Origin: Podarcis filfolensis
Lineage: Eukaryota
Direction: 5' to 3' (one strand)
NCBI GenBank assembly: GCA_964270895.1
Contig: OZ185445.1
Length of the DNA: 64,000 nucleotides
Below, piece after piece: positions 6,956 through 61,224 of the stretch. Under the pieces are notes generated by a model. It was not told the origin of the DNA. It ran no database searches and saw only the letters and a list, made by a program, of their open reading frames with translations. The position numbers were made by a program, and so were the translations under genes. Each line of letters begins with the position of its first letter. Position 1 is the first letter of the stretch.

Positions 6956-7999
6956 CAGTTTCCTGGATAGATCTGATCATCCTTAAACAAGAAGAGAGCA
7001 GGCGCACACGTGGGTTTTGGCGTAAATGTCACTTTCATTTCTAATACTAGACGCAGAATAAGACACAGACTACTTTTTAACACTTTGACAAGGGCGGAGG
7101 CAGTCTCGTCTCCATCACGTTTTTCTGCTTCAGTAGCTTCCTCAAGGAAACCCTTTTGGAACAGAGAAGCATCTGTGCTTGCATTTTGAATAGAAGACTG
7201 GTCGGCTGGTGGATTCCCCCCCCCCCCAATTTTTTTTAATAATAATAGTAATGGTAATAGTAATCAACCTTCAGCTTCCTCCTCCCCCCCCTCCCAGTTT
7301 GTGGAACTCTACCAGATCCTTGGTAGACCGAAATGATTAACCTAGCCTTATTCTTCAATCCAAATGTTTATTTTTTATTTTAGGCTTTGGCTTTCGTCTC
7401 TTGGAATAACAGCATACCCAGCAACACTACAAAACTTTTAAAAGTCTCACAGGCAGAGTTTGGCCCTACACACACACACACACACACACACAAACCCCTA
7501 AAAATAAATTATAAATACTTTAAAAGCACACAGGCCACAACATTATGCTTCCAAACACATGCTAATCGTTTCTCAATGTTTAGCAAAAGACTGCAGTCTT
7601 GTACACACTTACCCAGGAGTAAGTTTCATTGAATTCAATGGAACTTGCTTCTGAAGAAGCGTGCAACCGCTGGAAAACAATTACATCAGAACTTAAAGTA
7701 TTAACTTAATCATCCCCCACCTCCCAGAACAGCAAAAACTTGCACATGCATTTGTTTACCATGAGCACCATATCCTCTTTGCAGCGTATGGTTTACTCTT
7801 CATCATCCTGTGCCTGTCATCTTGTACATGTATACATGTACAGATAGATTTGGCACTCGTATGTCACTGAATTTCGTCCTCTCTCGCCTTGAGCTGTAGA
7901 AAAGGTGCCATTCAATAAGAATTCCTGACATGGCTGGGTCTGTCTCTTGCTGGAGTTTCTCGTTTCCTTGTGCAGCACGAAGATCATGAAGGAGTTTTT

Positions 8000-8021
8000 A
8001 CTTTCGGTTATCTAGCTTTAT
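8000..8021 (-). ncRNA. MIR9-2: mature miR-9-3p (miR-9*)
   Basis: AUAAAGCUAGAUAACCGAAAGU, exact. Confidence 0.98.
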
Positions 8022-8035
8022 GAAGACCAACACAC

Positions 8036-8058
8036 TCATACAGCTAGATAACCAAAGA
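8036..8058 (-). ncRNA. MIR9-2: mature miR-9-5p
   Basis: UCUUUGGUUAUCUAGCUGUAUGA, exact. Confidence 0.99.
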
Positions 8059-8949
8059 TAACAACTCGCTTCCCTCATATGCTCTGAGGTCGACTGGAGG
8101 GTCTTTTCCGCCCCTCCTTCTCTAGAATCCAGATTGTTTCTGCAAATAGACTTCTCCAAGAACACCAGCCGTGCCTTAAAATATTCATCCTTTCAGCGTA
8201 ATTGTCACCTGCTTCACAGTGTCTGGACTTGTGTGTGCTTCTAATACCACATCCCAAGTAGATCCGTCGCCTTCAAAGTTTTATTCCGAACTTTTCTTGT
8301 CTCTTTCTCTTTTACCCCCATCCTGTCTCTTTCTCCCTCCTTTAAAGCCAGCGATTTCCGGCAGCGATGGACCAACTATTCATCTGTTTAATATCAGAAA
8401 GTAAAACCAGCTATTAAGGTGCATCAAGCTGTTAAGAGTGCGAAGCATCCATCCCTCCACAGGCCTCTATTTGCATTGTAAATTGCTTCATTCTCGTGAA
8501 AAGTCTTTAGCCTCTATAAAGATGTAAAGCCATCGGCAATTTCCAGCGCAGAGCAAGGAGGAAGCAGGGGGTGTTGGGAGTGTCTCCCATTTCAGAAGAA
8601 ATTGACAAGATGATGGTGGTGGTGGTGCGAGGATCCAGCTCTCCCTCCTGATCCCTTTTGCGGATTATGCATCAGAGCGCTCTTAAAAATTCTTATTTTA
8701 ACCAAATGGTGGCAGCAAATATCTTGCGGGTTTTGAAGGGGAGGTGGGGGAGGAAGCAACCTGGCAGATCCACGATTTCTCAGGATTCCCAGAGCTGCTG
8801 CGCATGAGGAGCTGCAGGTCTTGCTGGCTGGCTGGCTGGCTTGCTGCTGCTGCTGCCCCCGGTCTGAAAGAAGGAGAAAAGGGCTATCATTGGAGGGCTT
8901 GCAGTGCCAAAAAATGTTGACCAGCCCGGCAAGGTCAGAGGTCCTGGAC

Positions 8950-9900: not shown

Positions 9901-11706
9901 CTTTCCAATTTTAATGCATCCGTTTCATTTGAAGATGTGTCCAAACACAGCGAAAATGTACTCTGGGTTGTTTTTCAAACTTCCTACCGCTGCTGATGGC
10001 AATGGCAAGCAGTATGCCCAGGGAAGCCCTCCATCCTGAAAGGTTCATAAACACCCTGTTCAGCCTCTCCCCATTCCCCTAACCTCCCAAAAGGCAAAAA
10101 GGAGCAGGCATTCAGAAAGAGGCATAAGGGACATTACCCTGTGAATTCCTGCTATAGAATTCGGACAGGGAGATTTTATATATTCTTCCCAGTGTAAAGG
10201 GCAAACATTACAGGCCCTCTTGATTATATGGGAAACAATGAATCTCACGGCAGAGAGCTGCGCTGTTTACTGATCAAATTAATAAATGCACTTCAACCGC
10301 TTGCCAGTTTATATTTAAACACTCAGCAGAGCTATGTCTGCCCCCACATTCCAAAAGGAACCAGGAGTCCTGCTGTTGCATGTTAAGGTATAGTATGTTA
10401 AGGGCAAAAGGAAACAATATATACTATACTGTTCAATATAGTCCAGGATTGTTTAGAGGACAGTCTTCAGAGTGCATTTTAAAAAGGCATATTTCCTACA
10501 ATGTGCCATACCTGCATGAGTTAGCATTTATTTTCTCCTTCACATATAAAAAAGGCAACATTTGTGTATGTGTGTGTGCTCGCGCGCCTGTGTGCGATAC
10601 CTACGTGTATGTGCACTCCACACCCACACACCAACCACAACCAGCCATCATCACCATATTAACGTGCTTGCATTATACTTGTGTGTTTTCCAGGGTATCT
10701 AACCTGCATGCCTGTCACTACCCTGAAGGGCGAAATCTGTGGGGTTTTGTGGAGCGAGACATGTCTACTTTCCCAATGTCTACTTTCGATACTCGAAATT
10801 AGACTTGTCAACGGCTAAAGATGAATGCTGCCATATATACAGGCAAAAGGAAAGCAAAATAAAGTAATGGCAAGGCAAAGTCCCCGATTAATTGATTGAA
10901 ATGATTCCTAGGTTGATGCTACCTATAAATGTTCCAAAAACAAAGCACCTTCACAACTGACGATGCACTCAAGCCACAACTGTTTTCATTCAGTATCCTC
11001 CCTGTATTGTTAATTATGCATCGTGAAATGTCATAGTCAGGTAAACCATGCTTACGGCGTCAGTGTCATGTTATATAAGACGACATGAGAAGGCCATGCC
11101 TCTGTTTTTCCACAGACAGAACAAAATGGTGAGGATTCCTATGTACAGTGCAGTGAGCTTCGCTTTTTTTTTTAACCATCTGAGGCTGCATAGGTACCAG
11201 CGGCATTAGTGTGTTGAGCAGCAATATGTATAAAGACACACGTTCATTCTGATGGTCTGTAGAAGTCTAATGAGCTTCTTTGAATTGGCAGATACACAGA
11301 ACAAAGCCCTGCCCCCCCCCACTTTATTTCGCAGTAGCTAGAGGCAGCAGTGCGAGTGATCGGGCATGTGCTATAACAGACCAGGCTTATGAGCTGATGC
11401 ATTAAAATCAGAGACAAGAACATTCAGATAACGTGAGGTCTCTCTGGGCATGCTATACATATTGGCATATATACACGTGTGTACACGCGCCTGAATGCGT
11501 TTAAAATGAAGTTGGCTAAGGAGGCAAGCCTTGGCTCTTATTTATTTTGACGCTGCCTTCAGGATCCATTGAATTCAATGGGACTTCTGCTACTATTCAC
11601 CTCCTGCACTTAAAAAGAGAATGACTTGTTTTCCTCTATCAGTTACCACGTAGATCAAGAAACACACCTGTGTCGTTTTGCAGATCGATAGCCTTTGGAG
11701 CCCTCA

Positions 11707-12286: not shown

Positions 12287-15243
12287 AGGCGGAGAATCCT
12301 GCAAGGGGTTCCTTTGGAATAAACAAGCGCTGTTAACCTGCGAGTGGATCTTATCTGTTGCACCTCCTACGAACCAAAATTCTGCCTTCGGGACAAGTCC
12401 TCCGGTTTCATGGTGGGGAAGGGGGTGTCTATATAGGAAGCCCACTAGGCTCCCATGAAAGGATGCCCATAATCCCGAGACTGAAGAGCACACACTCCAA
12501 TCCCTGATTCTTCGATAATTCACTTACAGCTCAATTCTGCACATGGCTACTAAAAAGTAAGTCCAATTGAATTCAATGGAACTTACTCACAGGAAACTGG
12601 ATTGCAGCCTTAAACATAAACTGCAATCCTCTCTTTGGAGCCGCGTGTAAAGTCATTTTATTCCTCGAATCTGCATGCCCCAAGAAGTCTCGTTGTACCT
12701 GCTTGGATTTTTATTGCAATCCTGATATTGGTTTCTATACCTACTGTACCTTCCACAAACAATATATTTACGACCATATGTCTGCAGTATTGCCACACCT
12801 AATATCCAGGGTGCGAAAGGTAAAGGGTCTGAAAATGTCTCTCAGAGGCAAATGTTTTGCTATTTTTTTGTGCTGTTGCTTATTCGGCAGCCACGTACAT
12901 TTCTTAATTTAATCATTAGGTTTAAAAGGGATTACCTTTATGTGCTGATTGTCACTCCATTTGATGGTCGCTTTCTGTCTGGCTCTGGAAAATAGACAAA
13001 AAGAGAGAGAGGCGAACGATCATTTAAAAATAAATATTTATGTTTATTCATGGATTGTGCAAGTGCATTCTGATTCAAGGCCTGTACAGCAGCAGCAGCA
13101 GCAGCAGCAGATCAGCCAATCCACTGAATCCTAGAGGCAAAATCCTCCAGGAAGTTCTCCTGCGCAACCCCCATGAAAATTAATGTGTTGGGGTAGGGCA
13201 TTACCCTGCTGCCTGCACCAGCTCTCGTCATGAGGGCTGCTCAGGAGAACTTCTTGATGGATTGAGACCCGTGGCTCCAAACTGCATTTTCCAAAGAGCT
13301 GCTAATATTATTTTCTTAAGATGAATCTATATACTGAACAGGAAAAGAAAACCAGGGGTGTATATTCTTTTCGGGTGTCAGAAGAGTTAAATATTTCATT
13401 TTAGATATATATGTATATATCCTCAGTGGTAAACTGGGATAGAAAGCCCAGAATATGAGAGAAGGGAGGCCGAATTTCTAAACTGAGATTATAAGAATAG
13501 CTTGATTTGTGGGGTGGGAGGCAGGGAAGGCAGAGGCGTCTGTATTTACATGCTGTAGGCTGCCAGTTGCTTAATAAAGGTCGGAGGCTCCACCTAGCCT
13601 CCACTTTCAAAATATGCAAAACGCGCTCTCTCTCTCTGGGTTTTCAAGCCTCGCAGGTTCAGATCGCGGCTGGCTGCATGGAGCTGCTTGGCTCTAAACA
13701 GACTCAGGCTGGTTACAGATTTACTCAAAGAAGAGCAGTGCTCGTGCATGTACTCCTTCTCGCCACCGCCACCCCCACTCCACCCCTCTTCTTTGCATCA
13801 CAGGATGGTGTTAATCACCTCAGCCAAAAAGGGAGGGGGGAGAGAAAGGGGGTGTCTTAATGCTACTCCCAATCAATCACGTGTGTTTAAAAAATTAAAA
13901 AAAGGACGAGGAGAAGCACTATTTGCTCTTTTCCCTGAATATACTGGGTATCCTTCTTCAGTCTCCTCTCCCACCTTTTTTTTAAAAAATCAGCCCTCTT
14001 GCATAAATACATGGTTCTCGACTTTGTTCCCCGCTGGAGCTGGCGAACTGGGTGTGCTTAGAGTGAGTGGCATTCAAGGTAGATGGGAGGAGAGAGCGTG
14101 GAGGCGAAACTCCACCGGCTTAATAGCAACCTGTGCTTTGGATGCTCCAAGACTCCGGAAGCTCAGGGAAGCCAGGCAGTCTGGGAGTTAGGCCGATCTA
14201 GAACCCAACGCTAGCTGAACCGCCTCAAATCCAAGGGAGACATCGACTCCAAAACCTATCACCTAAGTCGATCTACGACGCAAACCTGTGTGTGTGTCTG
14301 CTTAAGGCAAGCCCCACTGATTTACTCCCAAGTAAGCTTGTACAGGATTTGGGCCTTAACTGACTTGTGCATGGAGCTGTTCGCAACTCTCCCAAGCTAT
14401 CACACTCCTCGCAGGCGCTCTCGAACCCACAACCTGAGCGTCTCATTCAGAACTAGCAAAACCAATGAAAACGTTGCCAACGGCTTCTAATCTACACCTC
14501 GAAAGCTCCTTGCAAACAATGCCAAGGTAAATAAATCCACATACACTTGCGAGGCAAATTCACGTTGCCATAAATTTAATTACACTACTTTCTTTATAAA
14601 TTTGGCGGTCCAAGTAGGGAATGAGTTTCAAATTAGGAATTCATTAGACATATTATTTCACCAGTCATGCCTATTTGAAGTTACAGAAAGAACTGCTTCT
14701 CTAGATGTAAGACACGACAACAACAGCTCTCCTCACTCTTTTCAACCCTCATGCAAGTAAATAGTATACCTTTCAATTGGTATAGCCACAAAAGTCCAAG
14801 TTGAGGGGATCAAAGGGAGGTGCTAGGTCGGGAAGTTTGGATCTAAATACATTGTGAGAAAACGCCTCCCTTGCACCCTTCTCTAAAATAAGCAAATGTG
14901 CAGCCAGAGTTACCAATTTCACCGAACACTTTCTCTTCCCATTTTTCACTGTTCTCTCTCTCTTCCTCCCCCCTCCTTCGCTGTCAATCTGTGTGCTAAT
15001 TAATAGTCCCCTCGTCCCGAGGAAGTGCCTGCAACGCCAACAGGTTTCATATCACACGTCCAAAATCATCAGAAGCTCTCCGGTTAACCCATAAAGCTCT
15101 CCACTTCTGTTGATCTTCCTCCTAGGTTCCAGGGAAAGTCAATGGGAGCTCTAACAATGCAACCTGTTCAATGAAGCAACTATCTCACTCTTCCTCTTTC
15201 TAGCCCTGAACCTGACACAGACACCGATGGAGTTCACGTTCAG

Positions 15244-15290: not shown

Positions 15291-16599
15291 GCTCATGAAT
15301 CAGATGAACAACTGTAGCATAAAGTTCTCGCATAGTCCACACTTTCTCTCCCTTCCCCGGTTTCCCCACATTTAGTTTATAAAGAAGGCTAGTCGTGAGA
15401 AGTCGGCAGATATACTTACTTTTTCTCGTTTCTTCTCGTTCCAACAGATTGGGGGGGGAGGGAGGGGGGAAGGACAGTCTGATCCTAGATCTTAGGTGAA
15501 TGTGGTGGAATCTTCGGCAAGCAACAAGGATTCCTTAGCCAAAACTTCCTTTTAAATCGCAGAAAGCAGTTTCAAAGTCTCCCAAGATTCGGATCATCCC
15601 TTTCGTCATCTCTATTTATAACTGGCTTTTTAAAGTTCCATCGTAGAACACTTGCACGACTGGATTCTAAAATGGGTCCTTTTCCATCCAGAGGGGGGTG
15701 AGAATGAAGAGGGGATTTAAACAAACAGTTTTCTTTTCCCAATACAGCTTGCACAAAGCGCCAGAGTAGAAAGTGAAGTATTGTATGTGTGAGCCACTCT
15801 GCAAGTTTTTTTTAAAAAAACGGGGGCAGGGGGGGGGGGTTGGCGAGGTCTAGCCCAGCCCTCTCTGGAAAGGAGGACGTGCTCTGAAATTCAACCAGTT
15901 TCCCCAACGCTTTTGTTGCTCGCGAACTGAAGCCCTATTGTTCGTCCATTGCCACGGTCTTTTTCAATCCCTGCTATACGTTATGCGTTGCCAGAGATAA
16001 TGAATTTGCACCAAACCCTCTCCCAGCCCTTTTCTGACAGACGGAACAAATTAGAAATGTCTAGCCTAAACGGGAGCAATGGCTACATTTCCCTGTGGTG
16101 GAAGAGCAGGGAAATATGCATTTCTGCGTGGAATTCTTCTTTTCTTTTTTAAAAACTGCCTTTGCATCAAGAGCCCGCCTTTAAAACCAAAACAAAAAAC
16201 TTTTCACTTTCACGATTTTTCTTTTTAATGTTTCCTTCCGAAGAATAGAGTTGCTCTCTATGCCTTCCTTCCTGCCTGCCTTCTCTTCTCACTCCTTTTC
16301 TTTCTTTCTTCAATTCTTGAGGCAACCGAGCTATTGTGAGTTTAAGCTGTTGCCTTCTTCTCTGCAAAATACTCATGGCCATCTGAGTTTTTTGTAAACT
16401 TGCTCCGTGCTCTTCCGCGGTAGGTCAGGACTCTGTCGAACACTTGGGCTGCCTGGGCTGCCGGTACTTCAACATCGGCTTTCTTTTCCTTTTCTTAAAC
16501 GCTTTTTAGGTAAAAGCCAACGGCACCAGGCTGCTCGAGTTGATGTCTTCGGCGCAGAAGGATCTGAAAGGGCACCCGTCCTCCTTGCTCACAGAGGTT

Positions 16600-54319: not shown

Positions 54320-55304
54320 AAAACAATAACATATTTTGATGAGTTTCTGTGTTTTAAGTGCCATATCCGTATCTGAAGATCCTGCTTTTAGCTTCAAGAC
54401 AGGACTATTTTCCTACGAAGGATTGATTTACGAGAAAAGTCAACTCATGGTAGGCTGAACTAGTCAAATGTGGGTGGAAATTGCAACACTGCAGTGTTTT
54501 CTCTCGCTCCCCGCGTGTCCCCTCCCTCCACTTGTTTTGGCTTTGTCCCGCTTTCCTGCTCTCCACTAAAACAGGTCTGAACAAGCACTTGCAGAAAACC
54601 TGAAGTGAACTAATTCCATGCAGATGGATTTATGAACTTCAGTTAAGAGCCACAGGTAACCCAAAGGCTGCCAATTCCTCCCCTCCAGCTTTATGATCTC
54701 CAGGGCACCATTTGTCCTTAATGGTCCAAGCAGCCCTTTTCTTCTGTTGTGGGTGCAGCCAGTGGTTCTGAATGGTGGTCAGGTGCGCCGCAGGACGCAT
54801 TGGCCTCTATTTGTCCCCTCCCTCCTCTGATGCCCTCTCAAGTCTCTGTTTCCAGAGGCTTGCACAGCTGTTTGTTGCAGTGGCCCTGGCTACAAGTTCT
54901 CCAGGCAAATCATGCCTCCAGAGGCATGGGGTGTTGGTTGTTGGGAGCTGAGGTGGCCTTGGAGGAGAGGGGAGAGGAGAGGAGGCTGATGAAACCCTCC
55001 ACAAGGGAGGGTGTCAAAAAAAGGGGTGAGGGGCTGACAGCTTGGCAGGCAAGGGGCAACATAACTGAGCTTCTGAGACTTGGAGAAAGCTTCCCTACAG
55101 GGGAGCGGCAGAAATAATGTAGTTGGTCAAGGGAACCATCAACTCAAAAAGGTTGAAAGCCTCTGGAAGCTTTAGGCAGGGACTCCAGGTCTTGAGCTTA
55201 CATTAATGTCTAACTGTGTAGCAGAGCATTATTTAATTATTATATTATTATGATTATTTTAAAAAATGCACCAGAGACACTGTATCACTAAGAAAGCCAG
55301 TAAC

Positions 55305-55310
55305 TTTACT
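55305..55310 (-). terminator. Distal variant poly(A) signal AGUAAA
   Basis: About 20 nt upstream of the presumed mRNA end at about 55285. Confidence 0.6.
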
Positions 55311-55375
55311 GATTCGGCTGCAAAATACAAATTATACCTTATTTCCAGCAGGAGAAACATTTGAAATTTTCCCAT

Positions 55376-55389
55376 TTTATTTATTTATT
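55376..55389 (-). terminator. Three overlapping AAUAAA hexamers
   Basis: Minus strand AATAAATAAATAAA. Confidence 0.6.
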
Positions 55390-55868
55390 GTTCACTACAG
55401 ACAGCTGAATTAAGTCCCTTGAGATTCACAGATGTGATTTTTAACTTGGTTATAATGTCTTGTTATCTAGTGGCGACAAAGTCCAGCTTATGCCGCTGTG
55501 AGCCTCTTAAGTTTAATATTTCTTGCAAAATGCTCGTATGCCCCCATTTACAGGATGATTTCTTAATTATCGCTGATTTAATCAAAACAAATCCCCAGGA
55601 AAAGAAAATAGAAGCAAATCATCTGAAGCAATCCAAGTCAAATGCTTTGTGGTGCAATGTGAGCTGATGTCAGTGGCTCCACAGAGAGCATCAATGCTGG
55701 GGGTTTCATCTGTCATGGGGTTGACCTCTTTGAATGACACTGAGGCATGGGTCAGTCTGAGGGATGAACAGGGATGGGATGGTGAAGCCAAATGACCTGG
55801 TTATGCTCATAATCCAGCACGGAACATGATACAGGATGTATGGAACTCAACACTTGGATTGCTCCACA

Positions 55869-55878
55869 TCTTTGGTTA
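55869..55878 (-). promoter_or_regulatory. miR-9-5p 8mer target site in the MEF2C 3'UTR
   Basis: mRNA reads UAACCAAAGA, complementary to miR-9-5p nt 1-10. Confidence 0.7.
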
Positions 55879-56058
55879 AAGTATATTCACAAAAGCCTGT
55901 TATTAGCTAACAGTGAAGCATTCTCAACCGACCCCAATGTCCCACCACTCCTTCACGGGACCTGTAATGCCAGGAAATGGAGGCCACAGAAGTGAGGACG
56001 TCACTGCAGATGGCATAAAATGGGAGCAGATGAAGTATGCTGTGTTTAGGCAACAGCC

Positions 56059-56064
56059 TTTATT
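56059..56064 (-). terminator. Internal AAUAAA poly(A) signal
   Basis: Context CCTCAATAAAGGCTGTTGCC, recalled as shared with human. Confidence 0.55.
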
Positions 56065-59000
56065 GAGGTTTCAAGTGGCTTTTTGGGAAACAAAGACAAA
56101 GCATTTGCCTTCTGGGGGAAGGAGAAGAGAAAGGAAACAAAAACCACATATGTTGTGTCTACTAGGGAAGATGGGCCTAAGACAAATGCAAACAATAAAA
56201 AGGGGTTCTTGACATTCTTGCAAACAGCGTAGCAGTTGTTTTATTCTTGCTTTTTAGCTTTGCCTGAAAAAAGCTCTGAGAAACAGCAGATATCTTTATA
56301 TTAATCATTAAAAAATTTTAAATTCCGCTTCCGGGGAAAATAGAAACCATTTGGTTACAAAAAACAACTTTGAAAAAACATTGAAATGATTAAAAAGACT
56401 TCACCGGGAAAGGCATCAATGCATACAATATACAAATTTGTGCAGATTGTGTATATCATATCATTGTCACCAGCGATTAGGTTTAATAACGTCATCGACA
56501 AGGCTTTCCCAAATAAGGATCAGCAAGAAAGGGAGGAGATTCCTCTTAAGGGATCTCACGTTGCCTATACCTTTGTACTGCCTGGGTTGAAGTAAATCTT
56601 AATCCATTCTTGGGGCGCTGCCCCAAACTGCTTAAATATAAAGGAATCACACAATAAGCCCCAAAAGTAGCTTTGCAAATGCAATAGATGGTTAAGGTAC
56701 AGATAAAAGGAACAGTTAAAGATAGACAGTTAAAGTTTCTAGAAAGCGACATCACAATTAAAAGTTGTGCTTCTTTATTAATTAACTCCATTTACAATTA
56801 TGAATTAACCCTCACTTCTTGCCCCTATACTTCACTTTAGCTCAGTAGAGGAAAGAGGAGCGAAAACACGTCTATTTCCACACAATTCAGTTCTGTGGCT
56901 GTATAAAAACCAAGGTTTTAACTGCAAGAGATTGCCTAGCTTAGTTGCATGAGCTTGTTTACACTGTTACCTACTTGCACACAGGTACAATGCGGTAAGT
57001 TAACATTACACACCCACTTCTTTTCAGAAGCTCAAGTGTTATCTCCCCCCCCCCTTGTTGTGTAGCTGAGGCAGCTGTACGGTAAACTATTCATATGGCT
57101 ATTCTTCAGACTCAGAAGACTGACCCCATCAGCCCCATTGACAAATTACTTCCAACAATACTGAAAAACCAAATATTGTTTCTCTCTCCTTCTCATTTTG
57201 TTTCAACGACAAGGTACAATTGTCACATATTTGCATATTTAAGACACATCTAAGTTGAAAGTTCCCAAATGGAGAATGTGACTATTGGTATATGTCAAGG
57301 TGAGGGATATAATTTGGCAGATGTCTTGAAAAAAATCAATTATTTGCCCCATTCTCACTTTCTTTAAATGCCTGCGTATCTTTTGTAAATCACCTGTAAG
57401 AATGATGCATGATCAGCTGTTTTTCTGTGCTTGGAATATGTGGTCTCAGCATGCTCCTAAGATTTTCTGTGCCAGCCAATAAATACTTAGGATGGGACCA
57501 AGCAATTGTTGAACCAGCTCATCACCCCAAACGGCAATGCTACAAGTTGTGGTAGAAGGCAGAGACACAGGTGCAAATGTATACCTGCAAATAGGTCTAG
57601 AGTAACATTCATGATATGAGAAAAAAATGGGAAGTTTCACCTATGTTGTTCATGCTTATTATTGGGGGTTGTTAGGAGTCAACAAAAGCATGTTACAATT
57701 TGCGATGGGTGGCTTAAACCAAGCTTAAACAGTTCACCTCTGTCTACTAAACCTATGAATCTACATCAGCATTGGTCCAATGTAAGATGGATGTTTTGCA
57801 TACATGTCATAGTGCAATTCTCGCTTGTGACACTGAAAAAGTATTGCTGACTAATGAGCAGTGCCCAGCAAGAGTGTTTATTAACAGGTAATAAAGGATA
57901 GGAGGTCCTCCATTCTCTCCACTCTTCTTTATACTGGCAATATATCTATGTGGGTGGTAGGGATAATTTAGGAACAGCAGCAGCACCAGCTGACTTATGT
58001 CACTGAAGTACAAGAAGTTTACAGTACTTGGCTTTCTAACTCGTATTCCTCCTTCCCAACTGAGAATATGTGCTGCATCACTTGCAGAGCTCAGCAATGC
58101 TGATATGCAGGACTTGTTTGGAATGCCCCATGTCAAGCCTCAAATACAGTAAGTTGTGATGAAGACAAAGGGTGTTTTGACCTGTTTGCAGAGTGCCTTT
58201 CTTATCCTACCAAGAAGCTACATAGAGCCTCACCACCATCACACACACATCTGGGAATAGAGGGACTGGATTCCTAACAAGCCTCAGTCTCAGGATTATT
58301 ATTATTTTAAAAGAAAGAAAATGAATTAACTACCAATCACTTGCCACTGAAGTTCCACACGAGAAGGAAAAGATGCATTCGGAATGAATGACGCTCTCTT
58401 TCACGCAGTGCTATTTTTGCTTAACAAAACATGTTATTTCATAAGGGACAAACTCAATGCTACATGCAGGTGTAAGTTCCTCCTAACATTATAATTTTTT
58501 TTCTTTAAAGAAAAGAAGCCTCAAGAGGCAGCCATCAGAACAGAAATGGCGGGTGGAGAAGAGGTCCTTCACTTTTCCCCTGTGGGACATGTTTCTGCTT
58601 GATAACCACAGTTGCTTTCCTCCATATTGGGGTGATTGTGGAATGAAGGTTTGGAAATAGCACAACTTGGCTATTCTTTTAGCATGGTCATGAAACTGTG
58701 GGATGCCTGAAACTGACGCAGCAATTGATTGGGACTTAAGGACATCTTGTCTGCTCACGACAAAGGCAGTGCAAAACATGACTGCTCTTGAGCGGAACAG
58801 TCCACTCCTGTTACTCACTAAGAGTTGCTGGGTCAGACCTGCATGCTCATCACTTTCTGATTGCAACACGAGACTAAGTAAAGATCCCAACTCAAATGCA
58901 ATACTTTTCACTCCAGATGGATCACCCATTCTGCTTTGAGTTACCATAATGATGCATGACCAAGACTGTCATCCTATACCCGTTTACCTGGGAGTAATCT

Positions 59001-59981
59001 CCACTGAAGACTGTGCTGCAAGTGATGTAAATGCATATATAAATCAGGCCTTGGGTTCCATCAACTCATCTTTGCAATGAGCTTTAGAACTGGTGTGCTG
59101 CTGTTCCTGTCCTCCATTATTTTTGTCTAAGCTGGAAGAGATATTCTACACTTTCATGCCAAATCACATTTCTGAGGTAACGTAACCTTCCTTGGGTTTA
59201 AAAGACAGTTACGCTTGGGATAGCAGCTCCCCTTTTAGGTAACTCCGTACTGGATTTTTATATTTACTTCCACTTCACTTTGAAGCATGGGAGTCTGAAG
59301 GAATTTTTCCTGGGTGGCGGTGGCAATGGAAAAGCATATGAAATGCGGAGCAGGCTAGTTTCTCACAAAAAAAGAGAACAGTGCCTGTTCATTTTGCCTC
59401 CTATCTCAGGTCCTAAAAACTTAATCTTTTAAAAATACCCCAAAAAGCTGAGGATCAGGATATTATGGTTCTTCAGGGGTGGGGAACTGCCTCCTTTGCC
59501 TCCTCCCACCATGGATGTCTATGCTTTGAAGGATGCTACCCTAAACTTCCTTTCTTTTTTTCCTCCAGGTTGCAAATCAGAGCAAATCTCATGAGGATGC
59601 CAATTTTGATGAATTTATGGAATGAAGGCCAAGCTGAGCCAGATCATGTTGTGATCAATATTTGCAGAAAGCCACAAGTTACGCAAGACATAAATAAAGT
59701 AAGAAGAGGGCCTCAAATGTGTAGATCAGTAGGATGGAGCTGATCGGTATATACAATGGATCAGAAAACTGATGGCAGATGGATTAGAATTATATGGGCT
59801 GCTATAGGAAGGGGGGGGAAAATCTAATCTTTTGCAGATTAGCCTTCAACAGCTGACTGATTCTGTAAAATGTATGCAGATTAAAAGAAAAACCAAAAGG
59901 AGAAAAAAATAGTTACTTAAATGTGCAACTGCACAAATATAATTCCCCCACTATTAAGATAACAAAAAACTTCTGCTATTA

Positions 59982-60186: not shown

Positions 60187-60348
60187 CCCTTTTGTTTCTT
60201 TCAGGGATGTTTAAAATATTCGCGAAGCTATGAAGGGGAAAAAACACATTTTGGCTTAGTAGACTACAAAAAGCCACAATGCTTTGCGAACTCTGTCTTA
60301 CTTTTTAATATGAAAATAAGGAAAATGTAATTTACATATTTTTATATT

Positions 60349-60354
60349 TTTATT
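60349..60354 (-). terminator. Proximal AAUAAA in an AU-rich conserved block
   Basis: Minus strand TTATTAAATAAAAATATAAAAATATGTAAATTACATTTT. Confidence 0.4.
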
Positions 60355-60648
60355 TAATAAGTGATGCAGACCCAGAATTTTAAAAATTAAATAGGTTAGC
60401 CCTCAAACTAATTTTTTTTTTACAAGTATGGTCCTTTTTTAAATGCCATACTCCAATAATATGCCAACATATTTGTGTGCATTTCAGATATATTAGGTGA
60501 CCATCCTTTTTCTTTTTTTACTTGGTCACCCAATTTCTGGGTCTCTCAAAACGTCTGTACATTTTCTATATGTTGCATAACAGCTGCTTTCTCTCTCAGT
60601 AAAGATCTGCCACCGTTGGGCAAAAAAAGTTTCCTTTTTTTCTCTTTT

Positions 60649-61026: not shown

Positions 61027-61224
<198 letters not shown>

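What the first reader, a model, noticed from the sequence alone, without database searches (positions are those of the whole stretch)
55869..56064. Poly(A)-switchable miR-9-5p site in MEF2C, 48 kb from mir-9-2 itself
Seen: the MEF2C 3'UTR has UAACCAAAGA (55878-55869), pairing with miR-9-5p nt 1-10. It lies about 180 nt downstream of an AAUAAA (56059-64) and upstream of the distal signals (55376-89, 55305). Cleavage at the 56059 signal would remove the site; the longest isoform keeps it. Known: MEF2C has been reported to bind and activate the miR-9-2 upstream region (Davila et al. 2014). I recall the same TTAACCAAAGATGTGGAGCAATCCAAG block in the human UTR. Inference: a physically linked loop (MEF2C drives miR-9-2, miR-9 represses only long MEF2C isoforms) tuned by alternative polyadenylation, which may help explain the conserved linkage of the two genes.
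Basis: partly seen in the sequence, partly recalled or inferred. Interest (0 to 1): 0.72.

Follow-up and report, generated by a model that had tools for sequence, protein, structure and literature searches.

The report
Ancient miR-9 site in MEF2C tail
Near the end of the long untranslated tail of the MEF2C gene lies a binding site for microRNA-9 that has stayed unchanged from bony fish to lizards and birds, so it is probably a working brake on MEF2C. The idea that one particular nearby poly(A) signal switches it on and off is not supported, and neither is the idea that it explains why the two genes are neighbours.

Summary
TAACCAAAGA lies at 55878-55869 on the minus strand. It is an 8mer site for miR-9-5p with extra pairs to nt 9-10. 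It sits 5,149 nt after the MEF2C stop codon and 47.8 kb from a canonical mir-9 hairpin (7992-8067, same strand).

Its presence alone is near chance. Conservation is what makes it real. The 8mer is intact in 7 of 8 MEF2C tails I could fetch: this lizard-like window, an unidentified amniote contig, quail, eel, bonefish, whitefish and a goodeid. A snailfish keeps a 7mer-A1. In a six-species alignment the run AACCAAAGA is the longest invariant stretch outside the terminal poly(A) block.

The poly(A)-switch idea is not supported for the AAUAAA at 56059-64:
- AAUAAA occurs at background density in this window.
- This copy has no UGUA upstream and no GU-rich element downstream.
- It reads AGUAAA in one amniote.

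A better candidate for a short isoform is a conserved AUUAAA plus GU/U-rich block about 0.72 kb after the stop.

The linkage argument is weak. mir-9-1/MEF2D and mir-9-2/MEF2C are paralogous neighbour pairs in enhancer-dense regulatory blocks. I found no paper that tests miR-9 on MEF2C.

The parts
55869..55878 (-). miR-9-5p target site: 8mer ACCAAAGA (55876-55869) plus pairs to miRNA nt 9-10
   Evidence: The run AACCAAAGA is invariant in the six-species alignment. It is also intact in Xenoophorus and is a 7mer-A1 in Liparis.
55853..55898 (-). Conserved island around the site. Upstream is a UUUUGU..AUAU tract and downstream is GGAGCAAUCC.
   Evidence: Alignments.
56059..56064 (-). It has a poor poly(A) context and its use is untested.
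   Evidence: One search gives the position; 0 UGUA within 100 nt upstream and 0 GU-type triplets at +15..+55. AAUAAA in quail, AGUAAA in L001, unalignable in eel.
55376..55389 (-). Triple AAUAAA. It is an insertion specific to the window's lineage, about 85 nt before the ancestral terminal signal.
   Evidence: Absent at the homologous place in L001, quail and eel.
55261..55530 (-). Terminal conserved block of the 3'UTR. In orthologs the ancestral distal poly(A) region reads AGUAAA followed by a GU-rich tract. Similarity to every other species stops near 55261.
   Evidence: blastn end point. Alignments. No hits for the piece 55275-52000 in any species.
60262..60358 (-). Better candidate for a proximal poly(A) site, about 0.67-0.75 kb after the stop. 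It has AUUAAAUAAA (60358-60349) and AUUAAA (60309-60304), then a GU/U-rich block (60287-60262).
   Evidence: The hexamers are shared by the window, quail and L004. The GU/U-rich block is conserved to eel, Albula and Coregonus. It has the best downstream context in the table.
61027..61224 (-). End of the last MEF2C coding exon, with the stop codon at 61029-61027
   Evidence: Translation. It is 100% identical over 65 aa to proteins that sources name MEF2C (porpoise) or leave unnamed (goat, quail), while MEF2A-named proteins are 70% or less; the quail protein's cluster holds MEF2C-named members.
7992..8067 (-). mir-9 hairpin. It is called mir-9-2 because it neighbours MEF2C. The mature 5p arm is canonical.
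   Evidence: Rfam RF00237, 83.9 bits, E 3.7e-15.

Best explanation
The 10-mer is a functional, canonical miR-9-5p 8mer site about 0.5-0.6 kb before the end of the full-length MEF2C 3'UTR. It has been kept by purifying selection since at least the common ancestor of teleosts and tetrapods. Where miR-9 and long-UTR MEF2C mRNA are in the same cell, Argonaute-miR-9 binding would lower MEF2C output modestly. Mef2C has been reported to activate the miR-9-2 promoter, so the two links together would form a negative feedback loop that buffers MEF2C dose. Shown here: the site, its position after the stop, its deep conservation, and the neighbouring mir-9 hairpin. Inferred: that the transcript reaches the site in this species, that miR-9 binds and represses through it, and that the loop closes. 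Transcripts ending at any upstream poly(A) site would escape, but the AAUAAA at 56059-64 has no special claim to that role.
For: 1. Match: an 8mer plus nt 9-10 to the miRNA encoded at 7992-8067.
2. UTR unit: conserved blocks run in the same order from the stop codon to a terminal block in quail, eel, Albula, Coregonus, Liparis and Xenoophorus. All similarity stops near 55261, and nothing matches 55275-52000. This behaves as one 3'UTR.
3. Conservation of the site: TAACCAAAGA is in L001 and quail within an identical 27-nt block. It is also in Albula, Coregonus and Xenoophorus. Eel has AACCAAAGA. Liparis is weakened to CCAAAGA, a 7mer-A1.
4. Conservation relative to surroundings: in the six-species alignment AACCAAAGA is the longest invariant run outside the terminal block. 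By my count from the runs listed, only about 10 of about 808 8-mer positions are invariant.
5. Teleost tails carry a second conserved ACCAAAG site (AACCAAAGCCAGTGGCATT) in eel, Coregonus, Liparis and Xenoophorus. Two independent conserved miR-9 matches argue that miR-9 is the selective agent.
6. The flanks are AU-rich (0.65) and the site lies near the UTR end. Both are known to favour efficacy (established site-context rules; my own knowledge).
7. Literature: Mef2C activates the miR-9-2 promoter (PMC3979806). miR-9 overexpression in zebra finch Area X changed MEF2C mRNA, direction not stated in the text (PMC5800847).
Against: No listed run that holds the stretch is on record as RNA. No mammalian ortholog could be fetched: the porpoise and beluga isoforms were not on record.

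The conserved island is wider than a miRNA site, because GGAGCAAUCC and an upstream U-rich tract are also conserved. Another factor may therefore contribute.

Predicted accessibility is ordinary (59th percentile).

Davila et al. screened these mRNAs with TargetScanS and reported only HDAC4 as a miR-9 target. In zebrafish with reduced miR-9-5, the mef2cb in-situ pattern was unchanged. That test is qualitative and other miR-9 genes remained (PMC5909433). I found no paper that tests miR-9 on MEF2C.
Confidence: 0.7

Rival explanations
1. One reading: cleavage at the AAUAAA at 56059-64 is a regulated switch. It would give a roughly 5-kb UTR without the site, against a 5.7-kb UTR with it, and so tune a MEF2C/miR-9-2 loop.
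For: The hexamer is there, 181 nt upstream of the site. It is AAUAAA in quail too, inside an 80-nt stretch that is about 90% identical among three amniotes. MEF2C is listed among genes with differential proximal/distal 3'UTR use in human brain cells (PMC13754597).
Against: AAUAAA occurs about 1.06 times per kb per strand across the window, so five copies in the 5.1 kb upstream of the site is background. This copy has no UGUA in the 100 nt upstream. It has no UGU/GUG/GUU/UUG triplet at +15..+55, and the U fraction there is 0.33. L001 has AGUAAA at this place. The region is not alignable in fish. The human APA paper gives no site positions.
Confidence: 0.12
2. If alternative polyadenylation gates the site, the main short isoform ends at the conserved proximal signals about 0.67-0.75 kb after the stop (60358-60262). 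That would remove nearly all regulatory sites at once, not miR-9's in particular.
For: AUUAAAUAAA and AUUAAA are shared by the window, quail and L004. They are followed at the right distance by a GU/U-rich block conserved to three teleosts. This place has the best downstream score. MEF2C shows proximal/distal APA in human brain.
Against: No RNA ends were seen here. The hexamers themselves are not conserved in fish. The GU/U-rich block could serve another factor.
Confidence: 0.35
3. The island is conserved for a reason other than miR-9, such as an RNA-binding-protein site or a structure, and the seed match is coincidental.
For: Conservation extends beyond the seed match on both sides. Accessibility is ordinary.
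Against: The invariant run coincides with miRNA nt 1-9. A second, independent miR-9 match is conserved in teleost tails. Where the site changed, in Liparis, it kept a weaker canonical form.
Confidence: 0.13
4. The loop explains why MEF2C and mir-9-2 stay neighbours.
For: They are neighbours here and in human and zebrafish (PMC5909433).
Against: A miRNA acts in trans, so the loop puts no constraint on gene order. mir-9-1/MEF2D and mir-9-2/MEF2C are paralogous pairs, which places the linkage before the vertebrate genome duplications. Both lie in blocks dense in conserved non-coding elements (PMC3123655). A deeply conserved enhancer in this block acts on miR-9-2/miR-9-5 and not on mef2cb.
Confidence: 0.05

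Closest known systems
Canonical conserved 8mer miRNA target sites in 3'UTRs (seed-match class defined by Bartel and colleagues)
   Same: It has a match to miRNA nt 2-8 plus an A opposite nt 1. It lies in a 3'UTR near its end, has AU-rich flanks, and is conserved above its surroundings across vertebrate classes.
   Different: Nothing structural differs. What is missing is experimental proof of binding and repression for this miRNA-gene pair.
miRNA-transcription factor feedback loops, e.g. miR-9/TLX and miR-9/Hes1 (cited in PMC3979806), and the Mef2C-HDAC4-miR-9 positive loop of Davila et al. 2014
   Same: A transcription factor reported to drive miR-9-2 carries a conserved miR-9 site in its own mRNA.
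   Different: Davila's loop is positive and indirect, through HDAC4. This would be a direct negative arm, which that paper did not report.
Escape from miRNA repression through 3'UTR shortening by alternative polyadenylation
   Same: The site sits in the distal part of a long UTR that has several upstream hexamers. MEF2C shows APA in human brain (PMC13754597).
   Different: No specific, well-formed poly(A) site lies just upstream of the site. The effect would be generic to every distal element.
Genomic regulatory blocks that keep developmental genes and neighbouring miRNAs in synteny
   Same: TMEM161B-MEF2C-MIR9-2 synteny holds from human to zebrafish, with deeply conserved enhancers.
   Different: This explains the linkage without any role for the target site.

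Membership tests
Canonical miRNA 8mer target site | Watson-Crick match to miRNA nt 2-8 and an A opposite nt 1 | tested here: met
   ACCAAAGA at 55876-55869, against the 5p arm of the hairpin at 7992-8067
Canonical miRNA 8mer target site | It lies in the 3'UTR of an expressed mRNA, on the sense strand | tested here: inconclusive
   It is on the same strand, 5,149 nt after the stop. Conserved blocks run in the same order to a conserved terminal block in 7 other species. No RNA reads could be laid.
Canonical miRNA 8mer target site | Preferential conservation relative to the flanking UTR | tested here: met
   It is the longest invariant run outside the terminal block in the six-species alignment. 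The 8mer is intact in 7 of 8 species and is a 7mer-A1 in the eighth.
Canonical miRNA 8mer target site | Argonaute binding and seed-dependent repression | not testable with these tools
   This needs CLIP data or reporters. No paper found tests it.
APA-gated miRNA site | A functional poly(A) site upstream of the miRNA site: hexamer plus upstream UGUA and a downstream GU/U-rich element | tested here: inconclusive
   The hexamer at 56064-56059 is present but has no UGUA and no GU-type triplets, and it is AGUAAA in L001. A better-formed candidate lies at 60358-60262.
APA-gated miRNA site | Observed 3' ends at both sites, with tissue-dependent ratios | not testable with these tools
Human brain APA of MEF2C is reported without positions.
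miRNA-transcription factor negative feedback loop | The transcription factor binds and activates the miRNA gene | tested here: inconclusive
   Shown in rat and mouse cells by Davila et al., with a 34% reporter loss on deleting both sites. Here there are only MEF2-like motifs at 10309-10318 and 13024-13033, which are 2.2 and 5.0 kb upstream of the hairpin. Their conservation was not tested.
miRNA-transcription factor negative feedback loop | The miRNA represses the transcription factor in the same cells | not testable with these tools
   No data here. The songbird and zebrafish reports are indirect.

The most novel reading that the evidence does not exclude
MEF2C and its chromosomal neighbour mir-9-2 form a direct negative feedback loop that is at least as old as bony vertebrates. 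It would have one conserved site in amniotes and two in teleosts. Short-UTR isoforms made at a conserved proximal poly(A) site would bypass it. MEF2C dose in neurons would then depend on both miR-9-2 copy number and UTR choice. That bears on 5q14.3 deletions that remove MIR9-2, MEF2C or both.
Probability: 0.25. Interest if true: 0.55.

Novelty: new member of a known kind. Interest (0 to 1): 0.38.

Why it matters
MEF2C is dosage-sensitive: haploinsufficiency causes a severe neurodevelopmental syndrome. MIR9-2 lies in the same 5q14.3 deletion interval (PMC12324547). A direct, ancient miR-9 brake on MEF2C would add a testable negative arm to the published Mef2C-HDAC4-miR-9 circuit. It would also give a concrete element to mutate. 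However, this is an ordinary kind of element, a conserved seed site for a broadly conserved miRNA. Target-prediction databases very probably list it already; that is my expectation and I did not check it. The parts of the finding that would have been new, the specific poly(A) switch and the explanation of linkage, do not hold up.

Tried and rejected
One local blastn script did use the whole window file as its subject. Later scripts left those places out.

2. A search with the 65-aa C-terminal peptide alone found only paralog-like fragments, because of the tool's length window. Repeating it with the 130-aa last-exon ORF and region 66-130 gave named handles. I did not read the masked part of that exon in other species.

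3. Porpoise and beluga MEF2C isoforms were not on record, so there is no mammalian ortholog. The Gekko kuhli locus (L006) and L005 showed no similarity. L004 ends before the site.

4. L001 and L004 are Logan contigs of unknown organism. I do not take them for human. Each 'protein' that led to them is on a single contig in the whole collection. L004's protein clusters with a blue jay MEF2C.

5. I did not scan the metagenome collection with the conserved block, because it could have fetched human-derived contigs.

6. Paper searches: one hit was miR-935, not miR-9. Two searches were wasted on word matching.

7. Ideas dropped: 3'-supplementary pairing (no contiguous match to miRNA nt 13-16), and read-through from MEF2C feeding pri-mir-9-2 over 47 kb (no evidence).

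Full report
**What is there**

On the minus strand, TAACCAAAGA occupies 55878-55869. The window's own mir-9 hairpin (Rfam RF00237, 7992-8067, minus strand, 83.9 bits) carries the canonical 5p arm. The 10-mer pairs with nt 1-10 of that arm. In the usual classification it is an 8mer site (ACCAAAGA) plus two further pairs.

The last MEF2C coding exon ends ...[11 protein letters not shown], with its stop at 61029-61027. Its last 65 residues are 100% identical to proteins that sources name MEF2C or leave unnamed (porpoise, goat, quail), while MEF2A-named proteins are 70% or less. The quail protein's cluster holds MEF2C-named members.

The site therefore lies 5,149 nt downstream of the stop on the sense strand. 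It is the only ACCAAAG there. A triple AAUAAA is at 55389-55376. The hairpin is 47.8 kb further downstream. All coordinates in the finding are correct.

**Is it more than chance?**

Not by presence alone. ACCAAAG occurs 12 times in the window against 13.8 expected. One given 8mer is expected about 0.09 times in a 5.7-kb tail. The case rests on conservation.

**Getting orthologs**

No vertebrate genome collection was at hand, so I used gene calls in the protein collection as handles.

- An antisense ORF next to the site (window:55913-56209) led to a Logan contig, L001, of an unidentified organism. It is 77% identical to the window over 2.3 kb.
- The last-exon ORF, searched over residues 66-130, led to named records: scaled quail (L002), European eel (L003), bonefish Albula (L007), whitefish Coregonus (L008), snailfish Liparis (L009) and the goodeid Xenoophorus (L010).

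The window is only 73-83% identical to quail in the tail, so it is not a close bird relative. Other agents' notes call this genome a wall lizard. I did not verify that.

**One UTR unit**

In every species the conserved blocks lie in the same order: just after the stop, at about 0.7 kb, at the miR-9 site, and at a terminal block of about 200 nt. Similarity stops near window 55261. Nothing matches 55275-52000 in any species.

In the orthologs the terminal block ends with AGUAAA followed by a GU-rich tract. That is the arrangement expected of the ancestral distal poly(A) site. The window's triple AAUAAA is an insertion absent from L001, quail and eel.

The site is thus about 0.5-0.6 kb before the end of the full-length tail. 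That the lizard transcript really reaches it remains an inference.

**Conservation of the site**

| Species | Sequence at the site |
|---|---|
| L001, quail | 27-nt block around the site identical to the window |
| Albula, Coregonus, Xenoophorus | TAACCAAAGA kept |
| Eel | AACCAAAGA |
| Liparis | GACCCAAAGA, which is still a 7mer-A1 site |

In a six-species alignment of the last 0.8 kb, 223 of 1,193 columns are invariant. The run AACCAAAGA (55877-55869) is the longest invariant run outside the terminal block. By my count from the runs listed, only about 10 of about 808 8-mer positions are invariant.

Eel, Coregonus, Liparis and Xenoophorus share a second ACCAAAG match, in the context AACCAAAGCCAGTGGCATT, 0.3-0.6 kb upstream.

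Two independently conserved matches, and decay into a weaker canonical form where change did occur, point to miR-9 as the selective agent. The island is wider than the seed match, because GGAGCAAUCC and a U-rich tract are also conserved, so another factor may share it. Predicted accessibility is ordinary (59th percentile) and the flanks are 65% AU.

**The poly(A) switch**

AAUAAA occurs 136 times in the window on both strands, about 1.06 per kb per strand. Five copies in the 5.1 kb upstream of the site are therefore what the background gives.

The copy at 56064 has no UGUA in the 100 nt upstream. It has no UGU/GUG/GUU/UUG triplet at +15..+55, and the U content there is 0.33. It is AAUAAA in quail but AGUAAA in L001, and the region cannot be aligned in fish.

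The other upstream AAUAAA copies fare no better:

| Hexamer (start) | Where it is shared |
|---|---|
| 56245 | Window and L001, not quail |
| 56779 | Window and L001, not the bird sequences |
| 57882 | Lies in a 2.3-kb stretch (59667-57365) with no similarity to the bird sequences |

A better-formed candidate for a short isoform lies much nearer the stop. AUUAAAUAAA (60358-60349) and AUUAAA (60309-60304) are shared with quail and L004. They are followed by a GU/U-rich block (60287-60262) that is conserved to three teleosts.

A recent single-cell atlas lists MEF2C among genes with differential proximal/distal 3'UTR use in human brain (PMC13754597). Alternative polyadenylation of this gene is therefore real in at least one species, but no positions are given.

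Because the miR-9 site is near the very end of the tail, any upstream cleavage removes it. 'Switchable' is a generic property, not a feature of the 56059 signal.

No listed holder of the stretch is on record as RNA.

**The loop**

Davila et al. (PMC3979806) showed that Mef2C knockdown lowers rat miR-9-2 promoter activity. Deleting two Mef2 sites about 1.8 and 4.8 kb upstream lowered it by 34% for the double deletion. They screened the circuit's mRNAs with TargetScanS and reported only HDAC4 as a miR-9 target.

The window has MEF2-like motifs 2.2 and 5.0 kb upstream of the hairpin (10309-10318 and 13024-13033). Such AT-rich motifs are common here, and I could not test their conservation.

I found no paper that tests miR-9 on MEF2C. 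The indirect hints are these:
- MEF2C mRNA changed after miR-9 overexpression in zebra finch Area X, direction not stated in the text.
- The mef2cb in-situ pattern was unchanged in zebrafish with reduced miR-9-5.

**Linkage**

A miRNA acts in trans, so a feedback loop does not constrain gene order. PMC3123655 notes that mir-9-1 neighbours MEF2D and mir-9-2 neighbours MEF2C. These are paralogous pairs from the vertebrate genome duplications, and both lie in regions dense in conserved non-coding elements. PMC5909433 shows TMEM161B-MEF2C-MIR9-2 synteny from human to zebrafish. It also shows a deeply conserved enhancer there that acts on miR-9-2/miR-9-5 and not on mef2cb. Interleaved long-range enhancers explain the linkage better.

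**Verdict**

The site is very probably a real and ancient miR-9 target site in MEF2C (about 0.7). The specific poly(A) switch (about 0.12) and the linkage argument (about 0.05) are not supported.

This is a new, untested member of a very familiar class. Prediction databases probably list it already; that is my expectation and I did not check it.

No human sequence was fetched or compared. Masked N stretches were not filled.

Noticed in passing
L003:15488, L008:17772, L009:14470, L010:16519: Teleost MEF2C tails share a second conserved miR-9 7mer-m8 match, in the context AACCAAAGCCAGTGGCATT. It lies 0.3-0.6 kb upstream of the deep site. It is absent from the window and from quail. Albula has an ACCAAAG at 16065 in a different context.
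   Followed up: partly
window 55485-55491 (-): AUAAGCU, a 7mer-m8 match to miR-21-5p, sits in the terminal conserved block. It is identical in L001 and quail and reads ACAAGCU in eel. miR-21 repression of human MEF2C through one seed site is published (PMC3002786), but that paper gives no position, so identity with this site is not shown.
   Followed up: partly
window 57365-59667 (-): About 2.3 kb in the middle of the tail has no similarity to the two bird sequences. It largely accounts for the tail being about 5.7 kb here against about 4.4 kb in quail. It may be a lineage-specific insertion.
   Followed up: no
window 55990-56090 (-): About 80 nt around the 56064 hexamer are roughly 90% identical among the window, L001 and quail, although the place looks like a poor poly(A) site. 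The reason for this conservation is unexplained.
   Followed up: no
window 10309-10318 and 13024-13033: MEF2-consensus-like motifs (YTAWWWWTAR) lie 2.2 and 5.0 kb upstream of the mir-9 hairpin. This spacing is similar to the two Mef2 sites reported upstream of rat miR-9-2. The motif is common in this AT-rich window (26 matches).
   Followed up: no
window 55376-55389 (-): AAUAAAUAAAUAAA is an insertion specific to the window's lineage, about 85 nt before the ancestral terminal signal. It may have moved the main cleavage site slightly upstream in this lineage.
   Followed up: partly
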